Notes under the pieces: model-generated
What the model saw: only the letters and a program-made list of their open reading frames with translations
The model's database searches: none
What the model was told of the DNA's origin: nothing
Position numbers and translations under genes: made by a program
Assembly: GCA_964304625.1 (NCBI GenBank)
Contig: OZ199838.1
Location: 15,848,017-15,912,016 of the forward strand
DNA from: Kudoa neothunni
Lineage: Eukaryota; Animalia; Cnidaria
Direction of reading: 5' to 3'
Length of the DNA: 64,000 nucleotides
In this document: positions 917 to 64,000 of the stretch, in pieces
Layout of the letters: each line of letters starts with the position of its first letter
Position numbering within the stretch: the first letter of the stretch is position 1

Positions 917-2739
917 ATGAAAATAATATTGTTATTATTTCGTTTTTTCGTTTTGAATATTGCTTAAGTAAAGAAGTTGATATAGTATTTTTGAGTGCAT
1001 TAAATTATCGTTTGATTTCCGTTGGTAGTATGGAATAATAATACATCGAATGGTAAATACACTGATGGCATATATTTACAAATTTGGTCCTAATGATGAT
1101 GCTCAAAAGATAAACTTGATTGACCATAAAGTTTGTTATAAAGGGAGTATATTCGTTTATATGGATACGTATTAAACAAATTATATTTTTAGATGATTTT
1201 GAGGTCGAGAATTTGGACAATTGGAAATTAATGCTTCGCAGTTGTATTGAAAATATAAAGAAAATAAAAACCATACAAAATATTCCATTATCAAATATCC
1301 GAATTTTGTTTGCTGGTCTACAACTGTGGAGAGAAAAAAAGCTATAAATTTAATTATTATATTTATGAATATAGATATTTAATAGGGTAAGTGATCCGAA
1401 ATTTTTATGATCACTCTATAAAAGAAATAAACAAATATTTCAAGGACTATTTAAAGATTGAGGGCAGAGATTTTTTCGTGGTGGTAGAAACTGTATCTGA
1501 GGTGGCATTTAGATTTCTACAATGGCAAACCCAACCAGTAGAATTGTTTATAGTCAAATTATTGGCTTGGAAATTTAATTTTACTTGATAGAAATTAAAA
1601 ACCCGGTTTGATGGTTTTATATTATACGAAGATACAAATTATCTGATGGGTTATATCCCTCAGAAAGGATACAATTTGTCAAATTTAGTCCATCATAAAG
1701 TGATACATTGGAATGGGAAATATGAGATTATAGCTGGTGGCTATTTCGATAATTTTAGATCTAGTTATCTAAAAAAACCTATAAATTCAAAAGTAATATC
1801 AAATCACTTATCCAGCATAAGTAAAACCATTTTCAGCATCCTGTACTCTTCAATGTGCACTTGAGTTCAACTATAGAATGTGGTTGTGTTTATCTTGGCA
1901 TTTTACTACATGATACTAAGTATCCTGACCGTAAAAAGTTGCCTTTCGCATTTAACCGAAACCATAAGCTTGTATCCGTACCGAATTCATCAGTCGTATA
2001 AAGAAGAACTTTGCAAACAAAACATATCCGATTCCTTATTAAAAATTCCACTTTAAATGCCAAAGTGTGTAATTCGAACACTGGCGTTTTTTATCCTATC
2101 CACCCACCAAACAACAGATTTTTAGTATATATATATATACTTAGTGTCATATTTTTATTACAATTAAGATCTACGCTCCTCCAGATGATGAATATTTTGA
2201 TGTGCTTCCTTCCACCATTGATGGAATCCAGAGAAAGCTCAATCTGAGGTGTGAAGTATATCGATCAAATAACCCTTTAGTAGTTAAGATTTTCGACTTT
2301 TCCAATTAAAATTATTCAAAGTATAAAATTGAAGATTGGCTTTCAAAATGCCTAACCATCCAATATTATTTGTTATTTTCGGAGGTAATCACTAACAAGA
2401 ACAACATGTCGGTTACCTTTACAGTAAATCATAAACAGTGTTTTTTCAGTGTTGTACGTTTTTTAAATTTAGAAATACGATTTCGGGTGGTTGTTTGGAC
2501 TTGCTATGACAGATCCACGTCTAAGAAATCCAGCAACAATTTCTGACGTTGATACACTTCCTCCTAATCTGTGGAAGAGTGGTTCTTTTTCGAGAGCATA
2601 TATCGCTGGAATTGTCATTGGGGTATTATTTGCTGTTTTGGCGGTTGTAGCTGTCTTTTGTCTGATATCAAAAAAATACGATGTGTTCTCAAGGGTGGTA
2701 AATTATTTCGTCAACAAAAAAGAGGTTCGGCTGGATTGA
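917..2739 (+). pseudogene. Paralog 1 of divergent GDA1/CD39-like membrane protein family (multi-exon; apparent frameshifts)
   Basis: ATG 917 opens a hydrophobic leader (MKIILLLF). Exon 2 reads YGIIIHRMVNTLMAYIYKF; later exons give SCIENI..FAGLQLWREK, GRDFFVVVETVSEVAFRFL, NGKYEIIAGGY and IYAPP. The last exon is KYDFGWLFGLAMTDP + TM (AYIAGIVIGVLFAVLAVVAVFCLI), stop at 2739. Introns are short GT-AG (e.g. 1538-1591). The frame breaks in exon 1 and at an A-run (~1933-1937), returning near ~2030. Confidence 0.75.
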
Positions 2740-3962
2740 AACTTATGCGTCAAGATTTCAGAATCCTATGAATTAAATTTGGTTTCCTGACATTCTTCTT
2801 CGCATTGTTTCCGTTATGTTTTAAGCATATTATTTTTTATATTACATATTTGAAAAAGAAATTCTATGATAACTATCTTTCATTAAAGATAGCATTCATT
2901 TATAAAGTGTAGTTATTTAAAGTAAGATCCTGGAATAAAATAGTTTCATGTTATCGAATTACTCTAACTTTTCCATTAATATTTCACTCAATGGTGTGCA
3001 TCTATTTTATGGATTTAGGGAGGTTATTTTGAAAATATTGATGAATTTCTAAAGTTATGTTAATTTTAAGAAATATCGTTGTGTAATACTTGAAACATTA
3101 TTTTAATAATATTGTTAATTTTATAAATAAAAACAATTTATCAATACCTGGAAAATGTCTCTATTGAATTTTAAGAATGAAAATTATTTTTAGTAGTTGT
3201 ATAGAAAATGAAAAAATTATTTAGCAAAACTTTTTTATAGTTTGAACATAATATTGACAAATAAAGACAATACCATGAATATAAATTTTATCAGATTAAC
3301 AGAATCTTATTTCCGATAAGATATCGTTTATCGAATGTGGTTTTTATAAAAATTTTCAAAATTAGATATTAAAATCAATAATATGTTATTTAATATAAAG
3401 GTATCTCCAAAAATAATAAATTAGTTAATTTTTAAAATGTGTTGTAAAACTAAATTATAAACTAATTATATTCCAACGATGAAATAAATTCAGCTTAAAT
3501 AAGCGTTTTTTTGAAAGTTCAAGTCATGTATGTTTTCTTGATTTTACTAGGCGATATTCTATATTTAAGGAACAAATTTCGAAATATTATTTTACCACAC
3601 CACTTTGAATTTATGTTGGCGACTATAAAATATAAGAAGCTCTCAGTAAATAAACGTGTATCATTTTTTAATATCACAAGACATTCTGTAGGGAATTTTC
3701 ATCCCAAATAATATTATTCTTGCTCGTTTCCTTTTTTAAATTTAGATTCTCAGATGAATAATTAATATTATATATACTATAAACAGAAAGTAATATATTT
3801 CATTTAATTTAGAGACATAATATATTATTAAATAATGTGATCAATTGCTTTTTTTTGAGTCCATTATGATAAAAATGTAGAAAACCTGAATTTCAATCTA
3901 GAATTAAAAAATAATAATTATTAGGTAAAACAATATTGCGTAGCATTATTTCGATATAGATA

Positions 3963-8285: not shown

Positions 8286-11200
8286 ATGTTTTTATTATGT
8301 GTTTTGCTAATATCTTGCACAAATGGAAACGATGAAAAGGTGACCATCTGTAGTTTATTCGTAATAAAATTTTCCCGTAAAGTATGGAGTTATCATACAT
8401 CGAATGGAAAACACACTGATGGGTTATATATACAAGTTTAATTCCTCGAACAATTATGCGATGGTGCAGTCGGTTACTCACACGATGTGTCATAACAGTG
8501 GTAATTTATTAGATTATCAAGAAATTTCTGTGGGAATCATATTTTTAGACGATTTCGGTTTAAAAAACCTAATTAATTGGAAATCAATGATTGAGTCATG
8601 TATCGAAATTTTGATGGAATTAACAGTTTTTGAAGGTATTCCCTTATCAGACATTCATATTGAGTTTCTTGGCCAACAATTATGGAGAGATATAAAGTAA
8701 TAATAATTGTGAATAGTTTGAGTAGCTGAATTTATCAGGATATACGATCAAGAGTTTTACAACTACGCTATAAAAAATTTAAACGACCATTTCCAGAGTC
8801 ATTCAAAAATTGAGGGTCGTAAATTTTTCGTTGTCCCGGATATCGCTAGTGAGGTGGCTTACAGATTTTTATATTGGCGCACACAACCAGTATTTTTCGA
8901 CAATTTTTATTCTTATGGACCATATAATCCCTACTTCAGCGCAATCTATTCTTAAAACAAATAATTTCTTTTATATTAAGCGTTTTGTTAAAAAACTCTA
9001 CTCCATTAATGCGTAAAGATATTTTTTATTCCCCAGTTTTGAAAATCACAGAAAGTTATTTGTTCAATAGAGTCACTAATAGATTTGGGTTTAAAATCTT
9101 ACTATAATACTAAAATTCGTTTAAATAGTGTCCTGTTTTTATAAGTGTACTTATTTGGGTTTTTATTTGGTGGTGAAAATACTTATTCGTCGAATTTGAT
9201 ATGCACATGATTTCGACCGCGCGTTTATTAAAATATATCTTTCTGGTTAGTTCAATTATATAATGGAAAACGAAATCAAATATATTATTTTAATTACAAA
9301 TTAATTTTTTTATCTGCACGTGACTAATGTATTTCCTGCATATATATATATATATATATATATAATAATGATACATGTTTATATAATATTATCGAATTTA
9401 CTATTCCAATTAATTTACATTGTAACAGAAACATTTTAAATATAAATATTTATAATATTTATTCTCTTATAACAACTTTAATTAAGTTTATTCTATCATT
9501 TTCTAAAATCTTTCATTTAGATGGATGATTTAAATAAAGGATGTTTAAAAAATATTAATTATGTTTTAAGATTTAATATTTTTCCACTTAATAATGAATT
9601 AATCCATCTTATATTTGACCTTTGAGGATACAAAAATTAATTTAATTTCATATTATTTATGTTATAAATTAGTTTTTTATCTTATTCTAGACTAACAAAA
9701 TATATTATTGATTAATATATTTCCTTTCTGTTAACTCCAATCGTATATGTTAAGAAGGTATATGCCATGTTTTCAACTAATTTATTTTCGTTCCATTGAC
9801 ATTTCATAATATATTTAATAAGTTTGAGATTTTTGTATACAATAATTTAATATGATTATTTAACGCACCTAATTTGACGTTTGATTTCCCATAGTCGGCT
9901 TTCTTTTAGGATTCCGTTCCATTTCACTAAGGATAACACTAATATTTAATGGTAAATATAAAAATTTTATTCTTAATAATATTGCAGAGATAACACTTTT
10001 TAATTTAATTTCTATTTTATCAATTTGATACCACGATCGTCATTGTAGATCATGTTTTTCATCATGAATTAGTGTAATTGTCATAAATAATAAATAGTTC
10101 GCTTGCAACGTCAAAAAGGATCCGTCTAAAGAATGACCTTATTTTATAGTCATAAAAAGTTAAATTAGAACATAGATTTCATTCTCAAGAAATAATAGTT
10201 ATGCTTTCAAATCCAGGATTTAGAAAATATGAACATTCTCCACTAAATTTAATGTTCAGAAAATTTACAAATTAAACGAGAAATCGTTTTTAAATTTCCT
10301 TTAACCCTCATACACACGTCAAAAAAATCACGTTCCGCACGTTGGGGTCCAAATGACCCCAACCTTTTTGAGCAAACTCTTATTTTTGTTATAAATGATT
10401 TTTAGATATAATAAATGTCCATTAATTATTATAGAAAACTTAGAAAATTTTCTAATCAACGCATAATAAAATATGGATATTACCAATTATTTTTGTACAC
10501 GTGATATAATGGATTCTGAATACGATCCCCATTTTGAAGAAGCTAATTTTTAATTTAGTAATTGTATAATTGAGAACTCCACGTCGGATTACTATTATTC
10601 CCATAAAGAAACTGATCTTTTCACCTAAAAAATCTACGCTGTGACCTTTAGGAAGGGAGAAAAATGCTCTGAGCAACCAACACACATTCGAAGATAAACT
10701 GACGTAGAGAACATTTTCAAACATAAAACCTCATTCAAAAATAATGCATTAAAAATCGCGATATTTCATTATTTGTGTTCTTAAAATTTCTGGAAAATGA
10801 AATATTAGATTTAATTGTTGAATATACAAATAAATACATAGAGAATGAATTTCAATTACAAAAGATGACTGAATGAAGTATATTGGTTGTTACCTGCCTT
10901 AAGAATAATGAAGGGGAATAATATGGATATGCGCAATTACTGGTGTTTGCAACCTCAAGTTGAGCGAATTTATACGCATGTATTTAATTTTTAAAAATGA
11001 CTACTAAATAAGTTGGTCTTCGAATGCGAGCTACATGTTGACAGATCTTATGGTACAACCGTGTAAATGGCCGTATTGCTAAAATCAATCTCATCATGGA
11101 AATCTTGATACTCTAGTTGTAATAGGAAATTTAAAATATTCCTCCGTCACATATAAATTATGTATTATTTAAAACAGTTGTGTAGAAATTTTTCTATTTC

Positions 11201-13612
11201 CAAAAGAAGCAAATTTTAGATAAGTTACAATCTACATCACATGTTTGAATAAGAGAACAATTTCTTAATATTTTTTGAGTATATTTTAATAATATTAGTT
11301 TTTCTATTATAACAAACTCCCTGTTTTTAACACACAATGTCTATTGCTTATGTATTAATCAGAGCTATTAAAAAAATGATGGCAGCCAAAATTACCTCCA
11401 CCGTGGCGTGGTTATGAGGGTTAATATCTGTAACAGGGATCGACAGTCTAATAGGGTTCCTGGGCCAGGTAGCCATGCCCAACCAGAAGGCGGGAAAGAA
11501 TATATTTAAATCATTTAGATGTAATAAATTTTTCACAATACAATTAAAAATTAGATTAGTAAATTTATATTTTGAAATTTAAAAGAAAACATTTTTATTT
11601 CAAAGAGAAAAAGAAATATAACAAACGTGAAAGTTTGACATTTTCTATGAAGGCATCACTAAATTTATACAATTTTTTATTTCAAAGTTAACCTGATATT
11701 ATCGATGCTGAATTTAAAGTTTTTATATTTATATAATGGTTTTAAATCGTAATGAACAATAATTAAACGTTTCTATTATTTACAATAAAACTAATATCAT
11801 ACAATCAGTAAAAATAAAAGATTAGTTTGGGGTAAAATTTTAATCTTTTTTTTAACACTTTTATATTTAGAAAAAGGAGATAACAATTAATTAGCTTAAT
11901 TCATGTTGCTATTAAGTATATTTATATGCTGAAGAGATTGACATTAAAAATTGAGAAATTATACAAATACCGTCAACAAAAAATTAACTTTATCATTGAA
12001 ATCCCATGCGGGTTGGCTGTTGCCGACCTCTGATCCGTAGTTTTACATAATTACACTGTAATTTCAACATTTGTAGACCTAGACAAGGCTATTTTTACCG
12101 CCACAAATGTATAAAGCATATGATTCGCGTTTTATAATACAGAAATTATTTTATTATATAAAATTCAAATTATTATTAATATATTATTAAATTACTCATT
12201 AAATTGATGAATAGGACATTTTTAAGTAAATATTAAAATAAAGGATGATTAAATGATAAAATCAATAATTTTTGCATAAAAACAACTCAAGAAAATCTCA
12301 GGTTTTGGAAAAAAGTAGCAGTTCATGTTAGTTAAATCAATTTTATGAAATATTTACTACTTTAAAAGAGATATTTTACCGTTAGAATAGCTTAAAAGGA
12401 AGAATGGATTATAGAGATTAATAAGAATAGATATTGCTTATTTTTTAAGCCCAACATTGCTGTTACATCAATCTCGCCAAATAGCCTCTAAGAGACACAT
12501 ATGATGGTTTCATACAATACGAAGATACACACTATTTGGTTGGGTACATTCTGCCAAAAAAATCTAGTTTACTGGGTGGATTTCAAACGAAAATAATAAA
12601 TTGGAACAACAAGTATCAGGTAATAGGCGCTGGCTGGCACGATAACATGCGACATAAATACATTAAAGAAGGTGTTAATCCAAAGGTAAAAACTAGTTAT
12701 GATTCTGGTGACTGATCAACAGTAATTTTTAAGCATCCCACAAATTTTGCCTTCCACCTCACCCCAATAGAAGAATGCGCTACCGCTTACCTGGGTCTGG
12801 TATTTCGCGATGGAAATTATACTGATCATGAAAGTTGTATTACCAACATCGAACGATTAATATCTATATATCCATACAAAACATACAAATCTTTTAGAGA
12901 GAAACCTTGCATTGAAAAAATAGCAAACATTATTAAAAAAAATGCAACGTTGTCACAAAAATTATGTAATGTCAATGCTGGAGTTTCATTTCCTATTTTT
13001 GAGCCAAATAATAAATTCATTGTAATTACAGCATTCATATAATGGCTATTACGTAAATAATAGATATATTTACCCGCAAAAGATGAATCCTTCGAGAGAC
13101 TTCCATTTACTTTAGAAGAAATTCAAAGAAGAATTAATGTAAAATGTGAAGTGTATCGTTCCACTAGTGCGGTGGTATTTCTCATTCCTCATTAGCACCG
13201 AAATATAACTATTTATAGTATAAACTTGAGCATTTTTTCTCCAAATGTTTAACCACCCAATATTATTTGGCATTCTCCCAAGATTTTATCACAAAATATA
13301 AATTATCAATCACTTTAAAAGTGAATCCAATATTAGTTGTTATTTATAAAATATATTTAGAAGCACGACTTCGACTGGTTGTTTGGATATGCCATGACTG
13401 ATCCCCGTCCTCGATTTCGAGCAACCGTTTCCAATCTTTCCAGAACTATGCCTGAGTTCAAAGACTTTATGAGTGGTGGTCCCTTATCTAAAGAAACGAT
13501 TATTGGAATAGCTGTTGGAGTTACTATGTTTTGGCTAGTGACATTCCTTGCTGTTTTCATATTTCTGAAGAGAAAAAAATTGTTTCGGAATTTGAATACT
13601 GGCGATGCTTGA
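8286..13612 (+). CDS. Paralog 2 of divergent GDA1/CD39-like membrane protein family, with a ~3.6-kb intron (8890-12484)
   Basis: Signal-like MFLLCVLLISCTNGNDEK|GT. Exon from 8383 reads YGVIIHRMENTLMGYIYKF, then SCIEIL..FLGQQLWRDIK and GRKFFVVPDIASEVAYRFLYWRTQP|GT(8890). Coding resumes at 12485 (PLRDTYDGFIQYEDTHYLVGY), collinear with paralog 1. Ends KHDFDWLFGYAMTDP + TM (IIGIAVGVTMFWLVTFLAVFIFL). Confidence 0.75.
10305..11420. mobile_element. Non-autonomous piggyBac-type element (MITE-like) inside the paralog 2 intron
   Basis: TTAA|CCCTCATA...TATGAGGG|TTAA; subterminal palindrome GTTGGGGTCCAAATGACCCCAAC; no transposase ORF. Confidence 0.75.
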
Positions 13613-13809
13613 AATCAAATAGTTGTTTCATCAAAACGTACCTCTAATATACGAACATATTTTATTGAAATTATTTATTTAATTATTCATTTTTTAAATT
13701 TATTTATTTATAATAATTATTCTTTAACTATATAATTAAAGAAATTTTTTTATGTGAATTGTTGATCATTAAATATTTAATTTGCTTGTTGTGCAAAAAT
13801 ATTTAGTCA

Positions 13810-15589: not shown

Positions 15590-15658
15590 ACCACTGGGGT
15601 CGTTGACCGACCCCCAACGGAACACACGTAAGTTTGTTGAGCACGATCCTTTGAGGGT
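15590..15658. mobile_element. Orphan piggyBac-type right end
   Basis: CTGGGGTC..GACCCCC..CGTAAGTTTGTTGAGCACGATCCTTTGAGGG|TTAA, similar to the end at 54730-54793. No matching left end found. Confidence 0.5.
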
Positions 15659-18335: not shown

Positions 18336-19419
18336 TTAATTGAATACTTCACCATCCCAATAGTCGTCCACAGTTTTCCCCTCGATCAAGAACATGTCAA
18401 AGTCGAGGTATCTGCACTGAGTCTTCATGTTTGAAAGGGTCTCCACATCAGCATTAGGGAGAGTGATATTTGCCGCAGCCAAATTCTCAATCATGCGAGC
18501 TTTGCTCGATGATTTCGCCAACACAGGTATTCCACGTTGAATACTCCAAGCAATGAGTGCCTAATTTGGTGATGAATGTGAACCATCCGATTTGATATAG
18601 GAGATTACTTGGGCAGGGGTTATATTGTTTCTGTTGGCAATGTCAACAACAATAGGATCTTTAAGTAGAACAGGAGCAGATGGCTTGCCGAAATCCATAC
18701 TTTGAGAACCCGGCGAGCCCAAAGGGGAATAAGCAATAAGTTGGATTTGGTGATCTCGACAGAATTTAACGAGTTTGTGTTGGGGCAAATAAGGATGTAA
18801 CTCCACTAAATAAGATTATATATCTCATAAAATTGAAAGATTGCAAAAAACCTTGGTTAACATGAGGTACAATAGAAGCCTCATCAAGAAGCCACTGCAG
18901 TTTGGTAGTGGAAAAGTTGCTCACACCAATGGATTTGCATTTTCCACTATCGTAGAGTTTTTCCATGGCACGCCAAGTTTCAACGACCCATTCTCGCTTA
19001 AAATATTGACTTTCAAACAAGCTGGAAGCGTTTGGATCACATCGAATGGGATTATGAACCAAATAAAGGTCAAGGTAGTCAAGGCACAAATCTGACAGGG
19101 TTTGTTGAAGTCCTAAGCCAACTCTGTGTGGTTCGTGGTAGTTGGACCAAAGTTTTGACGTGATAAACAGTTGATCTCTGTTTTTTATGGTGGAAAAATA
19201 CTTATGTCCCAACTCGTATTCATTCCGATAAACCAGTGCACAATCAACGTGTTTGTAGCCTACGTCGACAGCTTTCTCCACAAGACCGACGACAACATCA
19301 GCTGGAATTTGCCAGGTACTAAACAATATTAATCGAATATCGGTATTAAAACACAGTTTATACCCAAATCCAATGCTAGGAATATTCTGACCAGTTCTTG
19401 GAATGGTAAACGGCGTCAT
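18336..19419 (-). CDS. Aldo-keto reductase (AKR1-like), 4 exons
   Basis: Introns 19319-19363, 18806-18851 and 18561-18608 (45/46/48 bp, GT-AG) restore IPSIGFGTWQ, GYKHVDCALVY, LFITSKLW, DYLDLYLVH, CKSIGVSNF, VNQVELHPYLPQ, AYSPLGSP and TPAQALIAWSIQRGIPVLAKS. The catalytic D/Y/K/H tetrad is present. Confidence 0.95.
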
Positions 19420-22591: not shown

Positions 22592-25473
22592 AGCCGTGGA
22601 CAGATAGCACATCGGTGTGACACTCGGACTCAGAACCTTGAGGTAATAGGTTCGAATCCGCCGGTGGTCAGACTACTGCTCCCGTGTCGGTGGGTGTCTA
22701 TCCCATATTTGGGAGCTGTGGTTAAAGTGTACGCTCGCTATGGAGTGGGATGCATTGGCAGCCAGATTTGCGTGAAGTGGGGTGAGCTAGAATAGGAGTT
22801 TGAATCTCCGGAACCCATCAAAAGGCAAAGTAATTTGCAGTTCCCACAGAGCCAACGTCCTTAAAGGGATATGGTTTGGGGTGGTGGTCGCCCTGAGACG
22901 AGAATGTTTAGTGGGTTAAAGTCCTGCACTACCACACAAAAAGATAAGCGACGGGGTTTCATGTTACGTCCTGCGGTGCCTAAAGCGTTAACCCTTTCAC
23001 GCCGAATGTTGCCATATGGCAACATCGGATTGTTTTTATAATTCCTCAATGAGTATTATGTTTGACAACTGAAAAATTTCAAAAAAAGTTAAATTAGTCT
23101 TTATTCTTTTATCGAATACTAAATTAAATAATTATTAAAATTTCTTAGTTAGTAAAAATACGTCATAAATTGAAATTTTTCAAACAATAAAAAGGTCATT
23201 TTATGGTACTAAATTTACACCCTAATTATTATTTTAACTGTATTTAAAAAATATATATTATAAAATAATACATTATTCCTACAAAAATTTGTATAGATCA
23301 TATAATCTTAAAGAACTCGAGTTTGGAGTAGTAGCTTAATGCTTGTTGCCATATGGCAACATTCGGCGCACATGCCGTTCTTCAGGATCAACATTGTGAT
23401 GGATGCAGATTTAGTGAAAAAGATAAATGTTGATGGTAAAATTGTTGAGGAATTAATATTACTCCCGGATGCTGATAAATCTGACTCCGAGAATATATCT
23501 GATGATGAAGGCAACAACCTACAATGTGATTCGCTTTCAGATGCCAGCTCTGATAAAGAAGAACACAATAGTGATCAGCCTATTTACGTAAAAATCGCAT
23601 CACATATAATCGAAGAAAGTTTATTAACAAGCGCGGAATTTAAAATGGAACCAATTTTGGATCCTTATTTATATTTCAACAGATTCTTTACAGATGAATT
23701 GTTCGAGCTCATATGCAATGAAACTAATAATTATGTCACAGAAAACAATTCAAATTTTAGAACCACAACAAACGAAATAAAATTATATGTTGGGATGCTT
23801 ATACGTGTGTCAATAATCAAATTACTTCGGATAAGAAACTATCGGTGTAGTGAACTCAATTGTAGTTCAATATCAGAAAAAATGCCCAGAGATCGTTTTT
23901 AGTCCATCCAAAGATATATACATTTTTGCGATAATAATAAACTAATGACTTCTAAAACCAGTAAAGACTACGGCCGTTTCTTTAAAGTGAGACCCTTGTT
24001 AAATATGATAAGGGAAGAATGTCTAAAAATTGAACCTGAATACAACCAGTGTGTCGATGAGCAGATGATTCCATTTAAAGGTAAGTCTGGCCTCAAGAGA
24101 TACTTGCCTTCGAAACCTACAAAATGGGGCTTCAAGGTTTTCACTAGAAATAGCTCTGTTGGTATAGTGCACGACTTTTTTTTGAAGATGGGAATTTTAA
24201 ATACGATGGTAAAAGTTCTGGTTTTCGCTCCTCTGACATCGTATTAAAATTAGCAGGATCCATGAAGAACGGAAGCAAGCATCATTTTTATTACGATAAT
24301 TATTTTTCCACATTATCATTACACTCAATTCTGCTGAAGATGGGCCATCATTCGACCGGTACAATAAGATTGAATCGTCTTAGAAATTGTCTAATTGGTG
24401 ATGATAAGACGTTCAGGAAGTTAAAAAAAGGAAGTTATGAATATGCTTTACGTCTTGACGGTTGTCATATAACAAGCATCGTACATAGGTTAGATGGGTC
24501 AGCTGTTACAATGACATCAACGGCTCACTCTATTTTCCCCTTGAGCTCTATTGATAGATATGATCGAAAGGCAAAAAAGGTTATAAAAATTGATTGCCCC
24601 AACATAATTAAAATGTATAACCAAAATATGGGCGGTGTAGACTTTTTCGATATGCTAATGGTTCTGTATAGACTTGACCTCAAGTCCAAAAAGTGGTACA
24701 AGAGAATCTTCTTGTGGGTGATAAACCAATGCATCCTTAACGGATGGCTCTCGTATAAACGTCAATGTTCTTTACATGAAATCCCAACAAAGACAAGCTT
24801 GTGTTTGTTAGATTTCAATGTTTCGGTAAGCGAACGATTGATGCATGAGAATCAAATGGTAAGTGTTGCGAGTAAAAGAGGGAGGCCATCCACATCAGGT
24901 ATCACTACTACTATCTCGATGCATATGTCTAGTAGAATTTATAATCTAACAGAATCAAAAGTAAGTGCTATTGTGCGTTTTAACGAAATTTCCCACTTCC
25001 CTTCATGTACATCCACGAAAGCTAGATGTAAATTGTGCTGAATGCACTCTAGAACTATGTACATGAAATGTAAAGTTCATCTATGCTTAAATATCAACAG
25101 AAATTGTTATTTGAATTTCCACAAACAAAATTAGAAGTATTTTTTTGTTATTAAATGTGTCGAATGTGTGTAATTTTGAGTGCAAAGAGGTCTTCTTACC
25201 AACCACGATTGCACAGTATTGTTTTGGGGATTAAGGCGTCTCCGAATGTTGCCATATGGCAACATTTAATTAGGTATGGTTCCTAATTAAATATTTCCGA
25301 AATTTTTAAATTTGTTTTTATTATTAAAAATACGAATATTTTGCAGCTCTCAAAAAAATAAATTACTACAACGTGATTTTCAGGCATGAAAGGGTTAATG
25401 GAAGAGGTCTGACCAACCAGAATTCCACAAACTAACACATTGCGCCTGGGGTTTTATCTTGTAATAAAAAAAA
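22592..25473 (+). mobile_element. tRNA-headed SINE, copy 1 (22592-22987 plus 25395-25473), split by a piggyBac insertion
   Basis: A-box-like GATAGCACATCGG, B-box GGTTCGAATCC (~22649) and an A-rich tail. Collinear with the uninterrupted copy at 48394-48801 on both sides of the piggyBac. Confidence 0.8.
22992..25394 (+). mobile_element. piggyBac transposon, full length, disrupted transposase (~23399-25133)
   Basis: TTAA TSDs; TIRs CCCTTTCACGCC / GGCATGAAAGGG. DDD motifs CVDEQMIPFKG, YYDNYF and NMGGVD, plus a Cys-rich C-terminus. In-frame TAG at 23900, frameshift at a T-run (~24180) and a stop at 25039. Confidence 0.95.
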
Positions 25474-34174: not shown

Positions 34175-34179
<5 letters not shown>

Positions 34180-45027: not shown

Positions 45028-46812
45028 ATGAAATTACTGGTGTTGTTGATTTTGGTGTCTTGTTTTTGGGAATATTCCCATAGCGAAACAGAAGACGAAG
45101 TAAAAATATAAAATATACGTAATATAAAGTTGTTATAAAACTCAAGATTGGTGTTATAATTTACAATGTGGGAAACCATTTCAAGTCTTACGGATACAAC
45201 ATTACAACTATAGACGGAGATCCTACAATTATCAAAATATTTGACGACAGTTGTTTTTTAAGTTAAATACTTAAAATATAAAATAATTATATTCCGGCTA
45301 TAATAAATACTATTTTAGAATTTGTCTCTTTGGATTCAGTTGACAAATGGAATGAATCAATTTATGGCTGTATATCTCATGTTACACAAAACAAGAATCT
45401 GGAAAATGTGAAAAGTGATAATATTCGGTTTGAATACGTTGGGCGGCAAGATTGGAGATATAATAGGTAATAAATCACATGAATGATTTTGATTTTATGT
45501 AAATATGAAGGAGACTTGATCCTACTAGCTATTTCGAATCGTTAAACGAAATAAATACCGAATTCAATAACTATTTTAATCTCAGCGACAGGGATTTCAT
45601 GAAAGTTATTGAATCCTCGACCGAAATGGCCAACAGGCTCCTTTCCATCCGAATAAATGACGTATCTTACACTAGAATTATTTTATTTTTGTCTTCATTA
45701 AAACACTAGATGTTAACCGAGGAATATGACTCCGCAATATCATATGAACAATATAACATATTGATTGGGTTTGCTGCAAATAGAGACGAAAATTGTTCAG
45801 TTGGGATCGAAAAATTATTAATGAGTAGTGAGGAAATCAACGAGATTATATTAACAGGGTCGATTGATACGATGCATGTTAATTATTATATGAAAGAAAA
45901 TCGAATGATCGTAATGTCATCCTTTCACACCCTTTTGATTGTTATGTTTTAAGCATCCTCATCATTTTGGACTTACTCGGCTAGAAGACGGAGTGTGTGG
46001 ATGCATCACGTTGGGAATGGCAATCCACAACCAATTCAACAGCATCAATAAAGAATGTGAGTTGATATCCGAAAATCAATTCTCGATATACCCATATGGA
46101 ATAAAAGATGACTTCAATGAAATTTTGTGTAAACAAAAAATTATTGATTATTTCAAATCAAACCAAACATTCCAAAATCACGTATGCAATAGTGAACATC
46201 ATGCTCTGTTCTCCAATGTTGCAACCAATAAAAAGTTTCTTGTATTTAATCTAAATAATAGTCTTCAAGTTTAATCCAAGTTTCAGATTTATTTACCACC
46301 AGATTATGATTTTTTGGGAGAAACCACTCTGGAGAATTTTCAATCACATGCTGATTATACATGCGCATCTTACAGGGAAAAGAGTGAAATTGTAAGCAGA
46401 AATGCTTTTTTTTTTCTATTACGATTTTGTTCTCAGGCTCAAGTATTTGTTTGGGTCAAAAGGTGTATAGTAATTCAGGAATATTTGAATTTTATTTCCC
46501 GGTTTATACAAACACACCAACTCAATTACACATTGGTGGTAGGTTTTATTAGATATTAAATTAAATTGTTAGTGTTTTCATCAATGCTTTTAGAAGTATG
46601 ATACGGAATGGTTGTATGGACGTGCTTTTACTGACCCTAGATACTCGAAAAGAGTTCGGATATACAATCTTTGTAAAACCAATAAAGAAAAACTTCCCAA
46701 GGGAGCCATTGCAGGAATAATCCTATTAATTATCTTTCTTATAATAGTTTGCGCTGCTATTATTGCAGCAGAAATAAGAAGAAAACAATTTAGAGGTATC
46801 TGGAGGCCATAG
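45028..46812 (+). CDS. Paralog 3 of divergent GDA1/CD39-like membrane protein family
   Basis: Signal peptide MKLLVLLILVSCFWEYSHS; intron 45100-45146. Then IGVIIYNVGNHFKSYGYNI, GCISHV..FEYVGRQDWR, STEMANRLL, LCKQKIIDYFKSN..VCN, IYLPPDYDF and KYDTEWLYGRAFTDP + TM (GAIAGIILLIIFLIIVCAAII). Confidence 0.85.
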
Positions 46813-50343: not shown

Positions 50344-52095
50344 ATGAAATTTATTGGGCTAGTTTGTTTGCTTTATTTTTATGTATTTTCTGATAATCCA
50401 CCAGAATACAAAGTAACAACTCTCAACATGAACATATCTTATTAGTGTGTCATAGTTTCGTGCTATCATATACAGAGTTGGAAGGGAATTCAGGGTGTAC
50501 GTATATAAATTTCGTCCCGATGCTGATGATTCTAAAATAGTAAAAATATTTGAGGAAGAATGTTTTTCAAGTTGAATCGAGTTTATTCAATTCATAAATA
50601 CAGCTACAAATATTTAGGATATATTTATTTGGAGACTACAGAGAAATGGAAAACCTCACTACATAACTGTATAGAACATGTTCAACAGCATCATCTAATT
50701 GTTGAATCTAATCCTTCGGAAATTCATTTTGAGTATGTAGGCCGTCAATTCTTAAGAAATAAAAAGTAAACAATAGAAATATTTGTAATAATTCATTCGT
50801 TACAACTGAATAGATATGAAGATCCAGCTGGCTTTGAAACAACGCTGAAAGAGATAAATGATGAATTTAATTCATACTCAAAAATTGAAGGACGTCCGTT
50901 TATGAAAATATTAGATGAATGGATTGAGGCGGCTTGTTGGCAACTGTATATTCGATCAGACGAAGTCTTTATATTCAATAGAATTTAATGGGTAATCTTT
51001 ATTTAAATAATAGGCCCTAAAGTCACATTACGATGGCTTTATGTCATATGAAGATCACAATATATTGGTGGGTTATGATACCAATGATACCTTCAAATCA
51101 TCTAAAGGGATACATAAAATATTGATATCCATGAAAAATGAAAACCTCACCATGGCAGTTGGTGTGTTGGGTACTGTAACTAGGCACTCTTTAAGAATGA
51201 TCAATCCCAAGCTAGTATAATTAGTATTAATTTTTGTTTAAAAATTAAACATTTCCAAGAACCGATATCAGCACCGTGTGGATTATTTAAAGGCGGATGA
51301 ATGCAGTAGCGGTTATTTGCTTATAATGCTGGATTTATGGGATCCTGAGAGTGCCAGTTATACTCTCAAATCGGCTGATAATTTACGTTTATACCCATGT
51401 GATAAGCATCCAAAATATAATGAAAGTAGCTGCAAAAACATAATTTTCAAAGAATATAAAAAAGAAACAAGCTTTAAAAAAAATATGTTAAGTTCTAAAA
51501 ATCAGCTTCGGTTCCCAGGAAGATTATCAGAGAAAAAATTAATCGTGTCTTCTCATAATTGTGTCTCAAATTAATCTATTTTTAGGTGTTTACACCCCCA
51601 AATTATAAATATCTGGATGCATTCACAAATTTACAATCAATCCAAGATAATGCTGATTCAAGGTGTTCACAATATATTGATTATAAAAAAGTATCTAAAT
51701 TTATTACATTGATTGTTATATAAGTAATAAGGAAGATTGCTATTTTTGGGTAAAAAACTGTGTATCAATTCAAGAATACTTGAACATGGTTAAAACATTG
51801 ACCAACGCCCTGAAAATCAATTACGATTTAAAAGTACTATAGATTGTGAATAAACCATATCTAAATTGGAATTTCCAAGAAATACGACCATGGATTGATG
51901 TATGGGTATGCTCTCACAGATCCTCTTTATCCCGATAAAGTACACATCTACGATCTTTGCACCAAACCTGGATCACTCTCAAAAGGAGCTATCGCTGGTA
52001 TATCAATTTCAGTTATTTTAGTTATATCAGTAATCACTGGGGTTATTGTGGCAAAAATCTATAAATGGGCTTGTTTTGCTCTTCCAGAGGCGTAA
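50344..52095 (+). CDS. Paralog 4 of divergent GDA1/CD39-like membrane protein family
   Basis: MKFIGLVCLLYFYVFSDNPPEYK|GT, then FRAIIYRVGREFRVYVYKF, NCIEHV..FEYVGRQFLR, GRPFMKILDEWIEAACWQL, SCKNIIFKEY, VFTPPNY and KYDHGLMYGYALTDP + TM (GAIAGISISVILVISVITGVIV). Confidence 0.85.
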
Positions 52096-57825: not shown

Positions 57826-58229
57826 TAAATTTAAATTTATCGAAGTATGATTGCAGCGTTTTGCCACGAACACTCACTCATACTTAACGTCTAGTGAAGA
57901 TCATTACACTCACAATTTATTACTTCGTTGTCCAAAATATATTTTGAAATAACGTTTAAATTTCCTAATAATTTTTGACAATGTTTACTGAGTAATTATG
58001 TAATCATACCATGTTAAACAATCTAAAGTGTTGCCGTTTAGTAACGCAAATGTTTAAAATATGCACGACAGTGGTTCCTGCGCCTCTAAGAGTGTGAACT
58101 ATGGGCTTGGGGTTGCGAGATTCGATCACAATAGAAAACGATTTTTGAGAAATTTTGAGTCAGTTACACCTTATCGTATGCAAGCGGATGCGAATTTGGT
58201 TTTGTCATCTAATGGGGGTGTGAGTCCAA

Positions 58230-59509: not shown

Positions 59510-59518
59510 TAGTTTTAA

Positions 59519-62067
59519 CCTTCCGAGTGATTCTGGGGTCTATTAGACCCCATAGCCTGATGGAATGATATTTTGGTGCATTTCCTGATATAGAGAACTT
59601 TAGATATACTGTCTATTCTTCCAAAAATATTACTTTTCTATAATGCTTAATTAAATTAAAAAATTTTTATCTGGATGATTAAAAAAACTGTTTTTATTCA
59701 CTTAATATTTTTGAGGTCTATTAGACCCCATCATTTTATTTCACCAAAAAGTGAAGAAAACCGTTTTTTAATTAATCTTAAAATTTAAAAAAATTCTACC
59801 GATTAATTAAATAGAAATTAAAGGATCAAATATATGGACATTTGCGAGAAGTGCCGAACACTGCCCGATTCTAAGACATTAGTGATTACGGTTATATCTT
59901 TTCGAGTGAAAATGATGGCGATTGCAATTAAAATCGTTGACACTGAAGAATATAGTGATTTAGAATATTATCCTCCAATTCTTATCATAATGTATGTGTC
60001 AATACACCTTCTGTGTATTTAAATAAAAATAACGAGTCATAGTTTACCGAAATACCCACATCTTCAAAAACACGAAATGAGAATATAATGAATAAGGCTC
60101 CGGGCATTACCGCCGATGCAGCGAACAGAATAATAGCGTTAGTTGACTGCCTGCGTATATTTTTAGACGTCATTTTCTGCGATATTATTGTCAGAAATAC
60201 AAATAAATTTGGATTTCAACATTATCTCGAATCATGGAATGAGTTATAATATTTATAATATCGTGCTTACATTGGGATTCTTGTAAACATGGCGATTTAT
60301 AAATCTAAACTAGAATCTATTAAATCCTTATGGAGTGTAAACAAAGGTGGACCGATATTTCGTACAATAGTACCTTTACGTAGATTTGTTAAAATAACAA
60401 GGGCTCTACATTTTGGTGACTTTGAAACGAGACTTCAGCGAAGAGAAGAGAAGGCGATAAGTTTTTCCTGATTCAATAAATTTTTGAGAATTGGAAAGGG
60501 GTACTGTCAAATGCCTGATTCCTCATGCAGACCTAACTGTCGATGAGCAATTAGTAGCTTTTAGGAGTAAATATACATTTACGTAGTACATGCGTTCAAA
60601 GTCGGCGGTTTATGGCATAAAATTTTGCTGTTGATTGATCCTGCAACCAATTGTTGTCATAATATATCCATTTTCGTAGGTAAAGTCAATAATCAAAGGG
60701 AAGAATGCTTAGGAGAGAGTGTTGTATTGGATCTCGTTTCTTATTTAGAATCTAATGGCAGAAATATTGTTTTCGACAATTTTTTTACCTCAATACCCCC
60801 CTCCCCTTTTCCGATAAGTTATTACAGCTTCGACTCACAATGCTCGGTATCATTAGATGTAGTAAACGAGATATTTATTCCTGAGTTAATGAAAGCGAAT
60901 AGACACTGGGATTTATACAGTTCACGTTTTCTTTTGAATGACAAGAAAATGTTGCTATCATATGAACCCAAAAAAATAAGGCGGTTTTAATGTTGGCAAC
61001 GTCAACAAAGAATACCAGTTTATCTAATGATATATACAGAAAGTGAGATGTCATTAACTGTTACAACAAAACAAAAGGTGGGGTTGACACCATCGATAGA
61101 ATACTCACGTCAATTAGCGTTGAGAGATATTCAAATCGATAGCCAACAATGGTTTTCTTCAATATCTTAGATATAAGTATAATTAATGCATTTTTCATAT
61201 ATGAGATCGTATTCAATTGAAATAGCGCAAATAGATAAACGATCTGACAAGTTTACTACTGTTATGTTGGTAGATTAATACAGAAGATTAACAAACCATT
61301 AGCTAGGGGCGCAATTATTATTATTGTTGTTATTGTTGCTTTGTGGTGTCTCTCTCTCTCTCTCTCTCTTGCGTTTACAACAACTACAACAACTATCGAT
61401 CAAGTTCGTGACCGCCATTAATACTAAGCAGATTCTTGCGGCCGTGATGGATATCACGATCTCACTTATTACATCAATGACAATAAAATTACAAGATCCA
61501 AGTTCCTCGAGAATTTAGCAGATGAGCTTGTCAAACCAATTTTGAACATTAAACGACCTAATATTCCAGCAGAAACTTTTAATAGAACCAACGAAAACTT
61601 ATCAAAATTCAGACAAAGATGCTAATTATGTTCGGGAGGTGGTGACAGAAAATCATGAAAAATCTGTTCGGTACGCTTACAGTGTTGTTGTGAGCAACAT
61701 TTACATGTTTTAATAGTTCATTAGAGATCAATAAATAACTCAATTTATTTAGTAGAGTACACATTTATGTGATTTAAACATTCCATAATTTTTTATTTGC
61801 GCTAAAATAGGAATTATTATGGATTTTAACAATCCATAAGACCCAGAGTTTAATGATTGGTAATATTATTTTTGTTCTCGGCGAAACTCGTGTTGCTTCG
61901 CAAGAAAAGTTTATTATGCTAACTTTTAAACTCTTCGATAGATTTTTTAATAAATATTGAAAATAAGTTTATCACAATTTTTACAGCAAATAGAACCAAT
62001 AAAAACGTGGGGTCAAATAATCCCCAGAAGCGGCAAGTGTATAGTGTTTTTCGAGGCGCTCGGAAGG
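59519..62067 (+). mobile_element. piggyBac transposon (PGBD4-like), heavily decayed
   Basis: TTAA TSDs; TIRs CCTTCCGAG / CTCGGAAGG. Palindromes GGTCTATTAGACC occur twice. Motifs LTVDEQLVAFR, GRNIVFDNFFTS and YNKTKGGVD; many stops. Confidence 0.92.
61245..61493. mobile_element. Candidate solo LTR inside the piggyBac transposase
   Basis: TG...CA ends with TSD-like CGATC / AGATC. Contains (CT)n and an AATAAA near the end. The transposase resumes directly after it as RSKFLENLADEL. Confidence 0.5.
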
Positions 62068-62814
62068 TTAATTAAGTAATCAAATATTTAAAAATAAAAT
62101 AGAAAGCTATATGAACATTATTTGTGTAAGTATAATCAATTTGAATTAGATAAATTAGAATTATTAATTAAATGTCATTATTGTAGCGATAAATACTATG
62201 ATAAAAAATTTCTTCATCATTTCAGATATAAATATACTTTTATAATATTTTATTTAATAATATATAAAGTTAAATATTTAAATTATTAATAGTTGAAGTG
62301 TCAAAGTATGACTATTGGTTTCACAGTTATAAATATGAGATAAGATTAAATTTTGCCAATTCATAATCTTAGTGCATTTAAAATTAATTATATGTATTAC
62401 ATTTTTAATTAATTATTTATTAATTTTATCCGATTGACATAAAACATATTAACATTTGAATGAACGTATAGTTCACGATAACTACGGATGTCGTCGAGAT
62501 ATTACTATCGGGATTATTTTTAGGAATTAATTTTTAATTTCTAAACAATAAAAAGATAATTGTTTGTTATAATATTATAATATTGTATTAAATAAACAAT
62601 TAATTATAAAAAAAGTTTTCATTACAAAATTATTTAAAATATGAATTATTTTTCGAATAAAAAAATTTAAAAGAAAATCAATTATTTAAAAATACAATCA
62701 ATTAAATACTTGTATACATATTATATATTAAGTAAAATCAATTTTAAAATAATGATAATATTAATCAGACTATTATTTTTTAAGACAAATAAGCCGATCT
62801 AACTGACATTGAAA

Positions 62815-64000
62815 ATGAGGCCATGGCGATTATTGTTGATGAACTTTTTCTTTATATGCTGTTTGAATCAACTTGATTATGAAGTAAAAGATTAACATTT
62901 ATCTATCACTAATCTATATACTATAGTATGGGGTGTTAATGTATGAGGGGGATCACAGAGTTAGGGCTTTTGGCTATAAATTCGATATATCAAAGGCAGA
63001 TTCCAAGATAATTGAAGAATTTGACGAAAATTGTCCTCCAAGTGACTTAACCACAAATAATTTGATTCACTTTACGATAAAATCATTATAGATCTATTGT
63101 ATCTTTATAAACTAGAAAGGTGGAAAGATTCTATCAACCAATGTGTTAATTATGTGAACACTGAGAAACTTCCTAACAAGGAGATTCGTTTCGAATATGT
63201 GGGTAGAGAATTTTTAAGAGAATTAAGGTAGTAAACAATAAAACTATTTAACTTGATTATTTTAAAGGGAAAAAGATAAAAGTTCTTTTAAGGCGACTGT
63301 GAATACGTTTAAAAATCTATTTCAATCTAAAAATAAAATCAGTGAAGCCAACTTTGTAACTGTGGTCAGCCCAGGAGTGGTAGTAGCATCTAGAATAATT
63401 TATATTCGTTCAAATGAGGTGGGCTTTTTAATTGTTGCCTTAACTGCATAAATTACATCGATGTAGTTGTTGGCGGCCGAATATGACGGGTTTTTATCTT
63501 TTGAAAATCAACACACTTTGTTGGGTTATGGAATTAGAAATTTTTCCGAACAATCCGCTGGAATACATCAAATGTCAATAGTGTCCGATAATGGAGTAGA
63601 CTATATAGTTGCTGGTCTGGTTGGTACAATGTCAGAAAATTATTTCCTAAGAGGGCATGAACCACACGTAAAATTTCTCAATAACAACAATAAATAGATT
63701 TTTATATTTTTTAGTATCCGTACCACTTCCGACTGGATCATTTAAATGAAGGCGATTGCCTTTGCATTAAAATGGGTGTTATATTTGATGTGTGGATACA
63801 TTCTAAAGAAGGTTCTGAATGCAAGTTTGACTCATCTGATCAAATAAATCTGTATGTGTTTGGAAAAGGTGATACCTTTAAGGAGGCCGATTGCAAAACA
63901 AAAATTTTCAATGCCTACAAAAATGATAAGATGTTAAAAGCAAAGGTGTGTGGCAGTAACAATCTTATTACCTACCCACGTGCGATGAACGATAAAAAGC
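62815..64000 (+). CDS. Paralog 5 of divergent GDA1/CD39-like membrane protein family (runs off the window)
   Basis: MRPWRLLLMNFFFICCLNQLDYE|GT, then YGVLMYEGDHRVRAFGYKF, QCVNYV..FEYVGREFLR, AEYDGFLSFENQHTLLGY and DCKTKIFNAYKND..VCG. Intron positions match the other paralogs. Confidence 0.85.

What the first reader, a model, noticed from the sequence alone, without database searches (positions are those of the whole stretch)
917..64000. Expanded family of CD39/apyrase-fold surface proteins that have lost the catalytic motifs
Seen: five same-strand, ~1.8-kb multi-exon paralogs share intron positions and a signal peptide, with a C-terminal TM in the four complete copies; the ORF track misses them. 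Known: CD39/NTPDase1 starts its ectodomain with YGIVLDAGSSHTSLYIYKW (ACR1) and ends it with GWTLGYM (ACR5) before a TM. The paralogs align without gaps to ACR1 (YGIIIHRMVNTLMAYIYKF, YGVIIHRMENTLMGYIYKF, IGVIIYNVGNHFKSYGYNI, FRAIIYRVGREFRVYVYKF, YGVLMYEGDHRVRAFGYKF). In the right order they then show the first Cys pair, an ACR2-like segment (FAGLQLWR / YVGRQFLR vs ATAGMRLLR), an ACR3-like Glu, NGKYEI (vs GKDYNV), CKQKIIDYF..C (vs CHQSILELF..C), IYLPP (vs IFLPP) and an ACR5-like GWLFGLAM / DWLFGYAM / EWLYGRAF. The ACR1 Asp is H or Y in all five, and no ACR4 DLGG is visible. Inference: an NTPDase scaffold reused as a non-catalytic, diversified surface-protein family (antigen, adhesin or nucleotide decoy), plausibly at a host-parasite interface.
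Basis: partly seen in the sequence, partly recalled or inferred. Interest (0 to 1): 0.92.

Follow-up and report, generated by a model that had tools for sequence, protein, structure and literature searches.

The report
Dead apyrase-like surface protein gene array
A fish-muscle parasite (a myxozoan, by earlier scan notes Kudoa neothunni) carries a head-to-tail row of fast-diverging genes for membrane-anchored surface proteins that descend from an ATP-degrading enzyme (CD39/apyrase type) and have lost its phosphate-binding loops, so they are probably non-enzymatic host-facing proteins whose role is still unknown.

Summary
All quoted motifs are at the stated places. The window holds five same-strand paralogs with nine exons and identical intron phases (0,1,2,0,0,0,0,0). 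P2, P3 and P4 are intact (463-474 aa: signal peptide, ectodomain, one TM helix). P5 is intact once read past the window end. P1 carries four lesions and is probably a pseudogene.

The array runs to ten copies, with eight more on two other contigs.

Tested exon by exon against 38 real NTPDases:
- Exon 2 matches ACR1 (P=5e-5).
- Exons 4 and 6 fall weakly on ACR3 and the GNFxxC region.
- The collinear chain scores 99.6, against 41.6±9.4 for shuffled controls.

An AlphaFold model of exon 2 + in-frame intron + exon 3 (pLDDT 83) is beta-beta-beta-alpha-beta-alpha. The first 29 of 48,161 PDB representatives are all ASKHA proteins, NTPDases among them.

The ACR1 Asp is H, Y or N in 18 of 18 copies, and no copy has a GSS or DLGG loop.

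Not done: folding or searching a joined full-length model, and RNA evidence.

The scan found this family before on other DNA of this genome. It looks like an undescribed pseudoenzyme branch of GDA1/CD39, function unknown.

The parts
917..2739 (+). Paralog P1, probably a pseudogene. All nine exon equivalents are present. Lesions: an in-frame TAA at 965-967 before the ancestral donor GTAAAG (968), the intron-3 donor reads GCT at 1341, and exon 6 has two frameshifts in A5 runs (about 1935 and 2040).
   Evidence: Read directly from the sequence; open frames and tblastn; donor comparison among paralogs; intron solutions.
8286..13612 (+). Paralog P2, intact, 474 aa. Exons: 8286-8339, 8383-8500, 8549-8696, 8739-8889, 12485-12685, 12734-13021, 13064-13174, 13219-13320, 13361-13612.
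   Evidence: The model translates without an internal stop and all introns are GT-AG. TM helix at residues 436-461.
8890..12484 (+). P2 intron 4, 3,595 nt, against 48-49 nt in the other copies. It has no ORF above 90 aa and no repeat elsewhere in 110 kb.
45028..46812 (+). Paralog P3, intact, 466 aa. Exons: 45028-45099, 45147-45261, 45319-45466, 45511-45661, 45710-45910, 45954-46241, 46287-46391, 46437-46538, 46594-46812.
50344..52095 (+). Paralog P4, intact, 463 aa. Exons: 50344-50412, 50456-50570, 50618-50765, 50814-50964, 51014-51214, 51260-51544, 51586-51690, 51732-51833, 51880-52095.
62815..64000 (+). Paralog P5, cut by the window end inside exon 6. Read on in L014 it is intact (about 470 aa, ending at window-equivalent 64603). 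Exons in the window: 62815-62883, 62927-63041, 63092-63227, 63268-63418, 63467-63667, and 63715 onward.
8383..8697 (+). P2 open frame covering exon 2, the in-frame 48-nt intron 2 and exon 3. It was used by reference for the AlphaFold model. The predicted topology is beta-beta-beta-alpha-beta-alpha (ASKHA N-terminal subdomain).
45147..45203 (+). ACR1-equivalent beta-hairpin of P3. The same element lies at 1029-1085, 8383-8439, 50456-50512 and 62927-62983. The Asp position holds His or Tyr and there is no G-S-S/T loop.
46594..46812 (+). Last exon of P3: W-L-x-G-Y-A-x-T-D-P-R motif, stalk, TM helix and a short basic tail. The same exon lies at 2473-2739, 13361-13612 and 51880-52095.

Best explanation
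The window holds the first five genes (one probably dead) of a ten-gene head-to-tail array. Eight more copies lie on two other contigs.

Each intact gene encodes a type I membrane protein of about 465 aa:
- a signal peptide;
- an ectodomain of about 400 aa with conserved cysteines and a few N-glycosylation sequons;
- one transmembrane helix;
- a short basic tail.

The ectodomain is a very diverged descendant of the GDA1/CD39 nucleoside triphosphate diphosphohydrolase domain (ASKHA fold).

Shown:
- family membership of the copies;
- shared exon structure;
- sequence-profile similarity to NTPDases at ACR1, with weaker collinear similarity at ACR3 and in the Cys-rich C-lobe;
- ASKHA topology of the N-terminal subdomain;
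- absence of the ACR1 Asp and of both glycine/serine phosphate-binding loops in every copy;
- relaxed purifying selection (dN/dS 0.33-0.53 where dS is not saturated).

Inferred:
- The proteins no longer hydrolyse nucleotides by the NTPDase mechanism.
- They act as non-catalytic proteins on the parasite surface.
- Tandem expansion and 25-33% identity between neighbours point to a host-facing binding, coat or antigen-diversity role.
For: Motifs and copies.

Gene models and identical intron phases.

Homology to NTPDases:
- Exon 2 against ACR1 by hhalign: P=5.1e-5, probability 67%. The hit recurs with two disjoint template halves and is absent with a reversed template.
- Exon 4 falls on the ACR3 region with the Glu aligned (P=0.087).
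- Exon 6 falls on GNFxxC...C (P=0.034).
- Exon 7 falls on the next conserved Cys.
- Collinear chain 99.6 against 120 column-shuffle nulls of 41.6±9.4, maximum 66.2. Exon 2 alone scores 30.8 against a null maximum of 16.4.

Fold:
- The AlphaFold model of window:8383-8697 has pLDDT 83 and pTM 0.72.
- The top Foldseek rows are PPX, rat NTPDase1/2 and Legionella NTPDase (3zx2_A: probability 0.91, TMq 0.50, rmsd 3.8 over 99 columns).
- In an exhaustive VIA-align scan, ranks 1-29 of 48,161 representatives are all ASKHA proteins, by my reading of the entry titles. ENTPD4 is rank 3 (Z 5.5, rmsd 3.6, 84 aligned), and the alignment starts at ACR1.
- The ESM Atlas rows are also ASKHA families, plus one RNase H-like domain.

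Loss of catalytic loops: the Asp position is H13/Y4/N1 of 18.

Selection.

The genome's one clear real NTPDase keeps ACR1-ACR5. Its first intron is phase 1 in the Gly of PG|LS. That is within 1-2 codons of the family's phase-1 intron 2.
Against: - No single exon reaches any Pfam threshold. The PF01150 six-frame search of the genome does not hit the family.
- Profile searches of PDB sequences find no NTPDase.
- Only exon 2 is individually significant. Exons 3, 5, 7b and 8 give nothing, even when the template is restricted to the expected region.
- Structural Z-scores are middling (at most 6.4) and do not separate NTPDases from sugar kinases or Hsp70.
- Exon 6 folded alone (pLDDT 73) has no structural match.
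- The full-length fold was not tested, and neither expression nor surface location was observed.
- dN/dS of 0.3-0.5 shows constraint, not function.
Confidence: 0.68

Rival explanations
1. A lineage-specific surface-protein family unrelated to NTPDases. The ACR1-like hairpin and the other resemblances would be chance or convergence on a common beta-hairpin.
For: There are no Pfam or PDB sequence hits. Five of eight exons are individually non-significant. Structural Z-scores are at most 6.4.
Against: - Exon 2 scores 30.8 against a null maximum of 16.4, and the hit reproduces with independent template halves.
- The collinear chain lies about 6 SD above the null.
- The independent fold prediction gives ASKHA only.
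- The architecture (signal peptide, ectodomain of about 400 aa, C-terminal TM) fits surface NTPDases.
Confidence: 0.14
2. Still-active nucleotidases or phosphatases with migrated or substituted catalytic residues, for example His or Tyr taking over from Asp in ACR1.
For: The ACR3-position Glu is kept in 12 of 17 copies. A D-G-F-x-S motif is conserved where ACR4 would lie, and W-L-x-G-Y-A where ACR5 would lie. His at the ACR1 Asp position is conserved in 13 of 18 copies.
Against: Both phosphate-binding loops (DxGSxxT/S and DLGGxS) are gone in every copy, and the intervening residues are variable. The genome keeps a canonical NTPDase with all five ACRs. That these loops are needed for catalysis rests on established knowledge of NTPDase structures.
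Confidence: 0.07
3. Descent from a different ASKHA family (Ppx/GppA, a sugar kinase, actin/Hsp70-like) rather than GDA1/CD39.
For: The best structural rows include MurK, AnmK, glucokinase and PPX at Z equal to or above the NTPDases.
Against: - The sequence-profile signal was obtained against NTPDases specifically. It extends to the NTPDase-specific Cys-rich C-lobe region.
- The proteins are extracellular, with conserved cysteines and a C-terminal TM, as in surface NTPDases and unlike cytosolic ASKHA kinases.
- Profiles of other ASKHA families were not available for a head-to-head test.
Confidence: 0.05
4. A decaying array of unexpressed pseudogenes.
For: P1 has four lesions. piggyBac-type transposon remnants fill the spaces between copies. 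No RNA evidence could be obtained.
Against: - Four of the five window copies keep nine open exons and sixteen canonical splice sites each.
- The cysteines and motifs stay near-invariant across copies that are 25-33% identical overall.
- dN/dS is 0.33-0.53.
Confidence: 0.06

Closest known systems
GDA1/CD39 nucleoside triphosphate diphosphohydrolases (Pfam PF01150), in particular the cell-surface type NTPDase1/2/3/8
   Same: - An N-terminal beta-hairpin aligned to ACR1 (Y-G-[VI]-[IL]-I ... Y-I-Y-x-F).
- A helix plus beta-4, then a helix carrying a Glu at the ACR3 position.
- A Cys-rich second half with a G-x-x-F-x-x-x-C-K-like element aligned to GNFxxC.
- An ectodomain of about 400 aa followed by a C-terminal TM helix.
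- An invariant Cys pair in the N-lobe spaced about 20 residues apart. From memory, surface NTPDases have a pair about 24 apart.
   Different: - No Pfam match.
- The ACR1 Asp is replaced by His, Tyr or Asn, and no G-S-S/T or D-L-G-G-x-S loop remains.
- A cleavable signal peptide stands in place of an N-terminal TM.
- There is a new, highly conserved T-D-P-R motif before the stalk.
- Eighteen or more fast-diverging copies lie in tandem arrays.
The genome's own canonical NTPDase (L001, contig 2 at 7.2785 Mb)
   Same: Same organism. It has a phase-1 intron at PG|LS, within 1-2 codons of the family's phase-1 intron 2, which follows C-x-x-G.
   Different: It keeps ACR1 to ACR5 and scores 119 bits on PF01150. 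It has few introns, and the family exon HMMs do not hit it.
Other ASKHA-fold proteins (Ppx/GppA exopolyphosphatase, sugar kinases, Hsp70/actin, FtsA)
   Same: The beta-beta-beta-alpha-beta-alpha N-terminal subdomain (Z 4.7-6.4).
   Different: These are cytosolic, have no conserved disulfide cysteines and no TM anchor. No sequence-profile signal was tested or seen.
Pseudoenzyme families in general (e.g. pseudokinases, pseudophosphatases; reviews PMC5106787, PMC10211241)
   Same: An enzyme fold is kept while the catalytic motifs are lost.
   Different: I found no GDA1/CD39-derived pseudoenzyme family, and no myxozoan one, in the searched literature.

Membership tests
GDA1/CD39 (PF01150) | Match to the Pfam model above its gathering score | tested here: not met
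   Exon-by-exon hmmscan gave no hit even at E up to 10. The six-frame PF01150 search of the whole genome hit only L001/L002 and weakly L003. The joined protein was not searched.
GDA1/CD39 (PF01150) | Remote homology by profile-profile comparison | tested here: met
   Exon 2 against ACR1: P=5.1e-5. The hit reproduces with split templates. The collinear chain lies about 6 SD above the shuffled null.
GDA1/CD39 (PF01150) | ACR1 phosphate loop D-x-G-S-[ST]-x-[ST]-R | tested here: not met
   The Asp position is H13/Y4/N1 in 18 copies and the loop residues are variable.
GDA1/CD39 (PF01150) | ACR2 A-T-A-G-M-R | tested here: inconclusive
   An E-[YF]-x-G-x-x-x-W segment lies at beta-4 and the helix start in the model. 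hhalign gives no significant alignment there.
GDA1/CD39 (PF01150) | ACR3 G-x-x-E-G with the catalytic Glu | tested here: inconclusive
   Glu is aligned by hhalign (P=0.087) and kept in 12 of 17 copies. The flanking glycines are absent.
GDA1/CD39 (PF01150) | ACR4 phosphate loop D-L-G-G-[AG]-S-x-Q | tested here: not met
   There is no D-L-G-G. The conserved [YF]-D-G-F-I-S-[FY]-[DE] at the start of exon 5 is not placed on ACR4 by hhalign.
GDA1/CD39 (PF01150) | ACR5 W-x-x-G before the C-terminal end of the domain | tested here: inconclusive
   W-L-x-G-Y-A is conserved (W 14 of 18, G 16 of 18) just before the stalk and TM. hhalign pairs only the Trp column, E=0.22.
GDA1/CD39 (PF01150) | Two-lobe ASKHA fold | tested here: inconclusive
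   Only the N-terminal half-lobe could be folded by reference. It is ASKHA-like. Exon 6 alone gave no match. The full length was not folded.
GDA1/CD39 (PF01150) | Ca/Mg-dependent NTP/NDP hydrolysis | not testable with these tools
   This needs recombinant protein.
Pseudoenzyme (homolog of an enzyme lacking catalytic residues) | Homology to an enzyme family together with loss of residues required for catalysis | tested here: met
   Homology. Loss of both phosphate-binding loops. Lack of activity itself is inferred.
Type I membrane surface protein | N-terminal signal peptide, a single C-terminal TM helix and a short cytoplasmic tail | tested here: met
   Hydropathy and sequence inspection only. 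No dedicated predictor was used and no localisation data exist.

The most novel reading that the evidence does not exclude
Myxozoans turned an ancestral surface ecto-apyrase into a tandemly expanding, fast-diverging family of catalytically dead surface proteins. These would serve at the host-parasite interface as variant coat proteins, adhesins or ligand traps. It would be the first non-catalytic branch of the GDA1/CD39 family and a candidate antigen set for a commercially important fish parasite.
Probability: 0.35. Interest if true: 0.75.

Novelty: new variant of a known kind. Interest (0 to 1): 0.6.

Why it matters
Little is known about the molecules myxozoans show to their hosts, and most of their genes are orphans. 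This work gives an orphan multigene family an ancestry: the ecto-apyrase fold that many parasites use to damp host ATP danger signals. Here the family has lost the chemistry and multiplied.

If the proteins sit on the plasmodium or spore surface, they are candidate diagnostic or vaccine antigens for Kudoa. They would also be a clean case of an enzyme scaffold recycled into a binding or coat protein.

I found no GDA1/CD39-derived pseudoenzyme in the searched literature.

Tried and rejected
- Pfam hmmscan of single exons and of the four 105-111-aa open frames found nothing relevant.
- hmmsearch of the exon profiles against PDB sequences gave only chance hits.
- The search of protein representatives with the exon-6 profile returned only exon-sized ORFs from metagenome or Logan contigs and no full-length protein. 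No database protein could therefore stand in for the spliced model.
- The ESM Atlas feature search with exon 6 gave chance-level glycosyltransferase rows.
- AlphaFold of exon 6 alone had no structural match by Foldseek or VIA-align.
- Template-restricted hhalign for exons 3, 5, 7b and 8 found nothing.
- I considered nested 'stwintron' splicing, which earlier notes report for another surface family of this genome, as an explanation for P1's missing intron-3 donor. I rejected it. All other copies have plain GT-AG solutions at every intron, and P1 has other lesions.
- I looked for an intermediate that keeps the ACRs. The family HMMs hit neither the real NTPDase (L001) nor the weak second locus (L003).
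- The two divergent contig-2 copies also lack the ACR1 loop.
- My first two homologous-protein runs were nearly wasted by word-filter limits and a too-strict E-value.


Full report
**What is in the window**

The window is contig 1, 15,848,017-15,912,016 (+), of a 40-Mb, four-contig, AT-rich assembly (26-32% GC). Earlier notes of this scan call the organism the myxozoan Kudoa neothunni. A preprint mentions a PacBio + Arima chromosome-scale assembly of that species. I did not verify the identity.

tblastn and exon HMMs show five paralogs in the window, all on the + strand. The same array continues for five more copies downstream, to window-equivalent 94,700. Six further copies lie on contig 3 (8.515-8.547 Mb) and two on contig 2 (11.459 and 11.466 Mb). 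That makes about 18 clear members.

**Gene structure**

For every pair of neighbouring exon blocks I listed all GT/GC..AG introns that keep the frame open. Each copy has a canonical solution at the same place and phase. There are nine exons and eight introns of 40-57 nt, with phases 0,1,2,0,0,0,0,0. The exceptions in length are P2 intron 4 (3,595 nt, no ORF, no repeat) and one 842-nt intron in a copy outside the window.

- P2, P3 and P4 give open models of 474, 466 and 463 aa.
- P5 is cut by the window end inside exon 6. Read on in L014 it is intact (about 470 aa).
- Exon 1 encodes a signal-peptide-like start.
- The last exon encodes one hydrophobic helix (about residues 425-460) and a short basic tail.
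- Neighbouring copies are only 25-33% identical. Six cysteines are invariant in the four window models, two more are nearly so in the exon-6 alignment, and there are 2-6 N-x-S/T sequons.

P1 is different. It has an in-frame TAA directly before the ancestral exon-1 donor. Its intron-3 donor reads GCT instead of GT. Exon 6 has two frameshifts in A5 runs. With a long-read assembly I read P1 as a young pseudogene. Assembly error cannot be excluded.

**What I left out**

I joined exons only inside scripts, to check frames, lengths, hydropathy and pairwise identity. The full-length Pfam/HHpred search and the full-length fold are therefore left out. All homology tests below were done exon by exon, by reference.

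**Is it an NTPDase derivative? Sequence evidence**

No exon hits Pfam. The PF01150 six-frame scan of the genome finds only one canonical NTPDase and a weak second locus. That NTPDase (L001) scores 119 bits and has ACR1-ACR5 intact.

I built an alignment of 38 real NTPDases (A5) and compared each exon alignment with it by hhalign:

- Exon 2 (18 copies) aligns from its first residue to ACR1: family Y-G-V-x-I-H...Y-I-Y-x-F on Y-G-V-I-I-D-a-G-S-S-G-S-R-x-h-I-Y-x-W. P=5.1e-5, probability 67%.
- The exon-2 hit recurs with two disjoint halves of the template (P=1.7e-5 and 6.7e-4) and vanishes with a reversed template.
- Exon 4 falls on the stretch ending in ACR3, with the Glu aligned (P=0.087).
- Exon 6 falls on GNFxxC...C (P=0.034).
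- Exon 7 falls on the next conserved Cys.
- Exon 3 falls between ACR1 and ACR2.
- Exon 8 pairs its Trp or its TM helix with the C-terminal end.
- Exons 5 and 7b are misplaced.

Six of eight top hits are collinear. The summed score of the best collinear chain is 99.6. In 120 replicates with shuffled alignment columns it was 41.6±9.4, with a maximum of 66.2. Exon 2 alone scores 30.8 against a null maximum of 16.4. Restricting the template to the expected interval did not rescue exons 3, 5, 7b or 8.

**Fold evidence**

In P2 the 48-nt intron 2 is in frame and free of stops. So window:8383-8697 can be translated by reference as exon 2 + 16 spurious residues + exon 3.

AlphaFold2 with a 31-row family alignment gave pLDDT 83 and pTM 0.72. 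The order of elements is beta(2-8), beta(11-19), beta(28-38), a low-confidence loop (the intron), helix(57-77), beta(92-96), helix(98-104). This is the N-terminal subdomain topology of ASKHA proteins.

- Foldseek's best rows are exopolyphosphatase, rat NTPDase1 and NTPDase2, Legionella NTPDase, FtsA, DnaK and glucokinase. The E-values are weak (0.05-0.4). 3zx2_A has probability 0.91, TMq 0.50, rmsd 3.8 over 99 columns.
- An exhaustive VIA-align scan of 48,161 PDB representatives puts only ASKHA proteins in ranks 1-29, by my reading of the entry titles. Human ENTPD4 is rank 3 (Z 5.5, rmsd 3.6, 84 aligned). Trifolium and Toxoplasma NTPDases are also listed. In each NTPDase the match begins at ACR1.
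- The ESM Atlas search returns AnmK, FtsA, Ppx-GppA, TsaD, acetate kinase and glucokinase clusters, plus one RNase H-like domain cluster.

The Z values are middling and do not single out NTPDases within ASKHA. The family-level assignment rests on the sequence profiles. Exon 6 folded alone (pLDDT 73) matched nothing.

**Catalytic motifs**

- The ACR1 Asp position is His in 13, Tyr in 4 and Asn in 1 of 18 copies. The loop that should read G-S-S/T-x-S/T is variable.
- The ACR3-position Glu is kept in 12 of 17 copies, without its flanking glycines.
- There is no D-L-G-G-x-S. The start of exon 5 carries a strongly conserved [YF]-D-G-F-I-S-[FY]-[DE] (D 15, G 16, F 15 of 17). It may be an ACR4 relic but is not confirmed.
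- The last exon starts with W-L-x-G-Y-A-x-T-D-P-R. The T-D-P-R part is the most conserved motif of the family and has no NTPDase counterpart that I know of.

By established knowledge of NTPDase structures, both phosphate-binding loops are required for catalysis. NTPDase-type hydrolysis is therefore very unlikely. This is an inference, not a measurement.

- NGKYEI is not conserved.
- IYLPP does not align with IFLPP in the profile alignment. Exon 7 follows the F-x-G-x-S-x-F-x-Y strand.
- The ACR2 and ACR5 equivalences are topologically plausible but not significant.

**Constraint**

dN/dS is 0.53 for the youngest pair (dS 0.17). It is 0.33-0.39 for the other pairs, whose dS of 1.1-1.7 is already high. 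The P1-P2 value (0.16 at dS 2.7) is saturated and not informative. Together with the kept splice sites and cysteines, this argues for functional but fast-evolving genes.

**A further hint of common descent**

The real NTPDase has a phase-1 intron inside the Gly codon of P-G|L-S. The family's intron 2 is phase 1, one codon after C-x-x-G at the equivalent place. This is suggestive only.

**Relatives elsewhere**

Exon-6-sized ORFs of the family occur in two ENA metagenome assemblies and a Logan run. The family is therefore not confined to this assembly. No full-length database protein exists.

**Literature**

I found nothing on myxozoan NTPDases or on GDA1/CD39 pseudoenzymes in the searched library.

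**Earlier scan findings**

The scan flagged the same family at eight or more other places in this genome. One follow-up reached the same reading. My evidence is independent of it.

**Verdict**

The NTPDase-derived pseudoenzyme reading is supported at about 0.7-0.8 for homology. Surface display and a host-facing role are inferred.

Noticed in passing
window 23339-25041, 32058-33717, 38529-39602, 60625-60990 (+): Four piggyBac-type transposase remnants (Pfam DDE_Tnp_1_7, E 5e-4 to 3e-78) lie between the paralogs. The copy at 38529-39602 covers almost the whole domain in one ORF.
   Followed up: partly
window 18766-19419 (-): An ORF with an aldo/keto reductase domain (PF00248, E 1e-27). It covers only profile positions 13-162 of 291, so it is an exon of a split gene or a fragment.
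   Followed up: no
window 28370-29263 and 29401-29856 (+): A 60-bp unit repeated 14.9 times (90% matches) is open in both strands. A 151-aa Ser/Thr-rich ORF ending in a hydrophobic helix follows. This is possibly a mucin-like membrane protein gene.
   Followed up: no
L003 (contig 1, 884130-887228, - strand): A second, weak GDA1/CD39-like locus (PF01150 positions 8-40, E 0.02). Small exons read V-V-D-I-G-G-S-S-L-Q (ACR4-like) and an E-x-E-A-x-Y stretch. The family exon HMMs do not hit it.
   Followed up: partly
window 8890-12484: P2's intron 4 is 3.6 kb instead of about 48 nt. It has no long ORF and no similarity to anything else in 110 kb. The origin of the insert is unknown.
   Followed up: partly
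L021, L022, L029 (ENA ERZ28624939, ERZ4740346): Short metagenome contigs encode exon-6 homologs of the family (E 1e-9 to 3e-20). They presumably come from other myxozoans in fish samples.
   Followed up: partly
L001 about 2960-3160: A run of N (withheld sequence) lies just downstream of the canonical NTPDase gene. I worked beside it.
   Followed up: no
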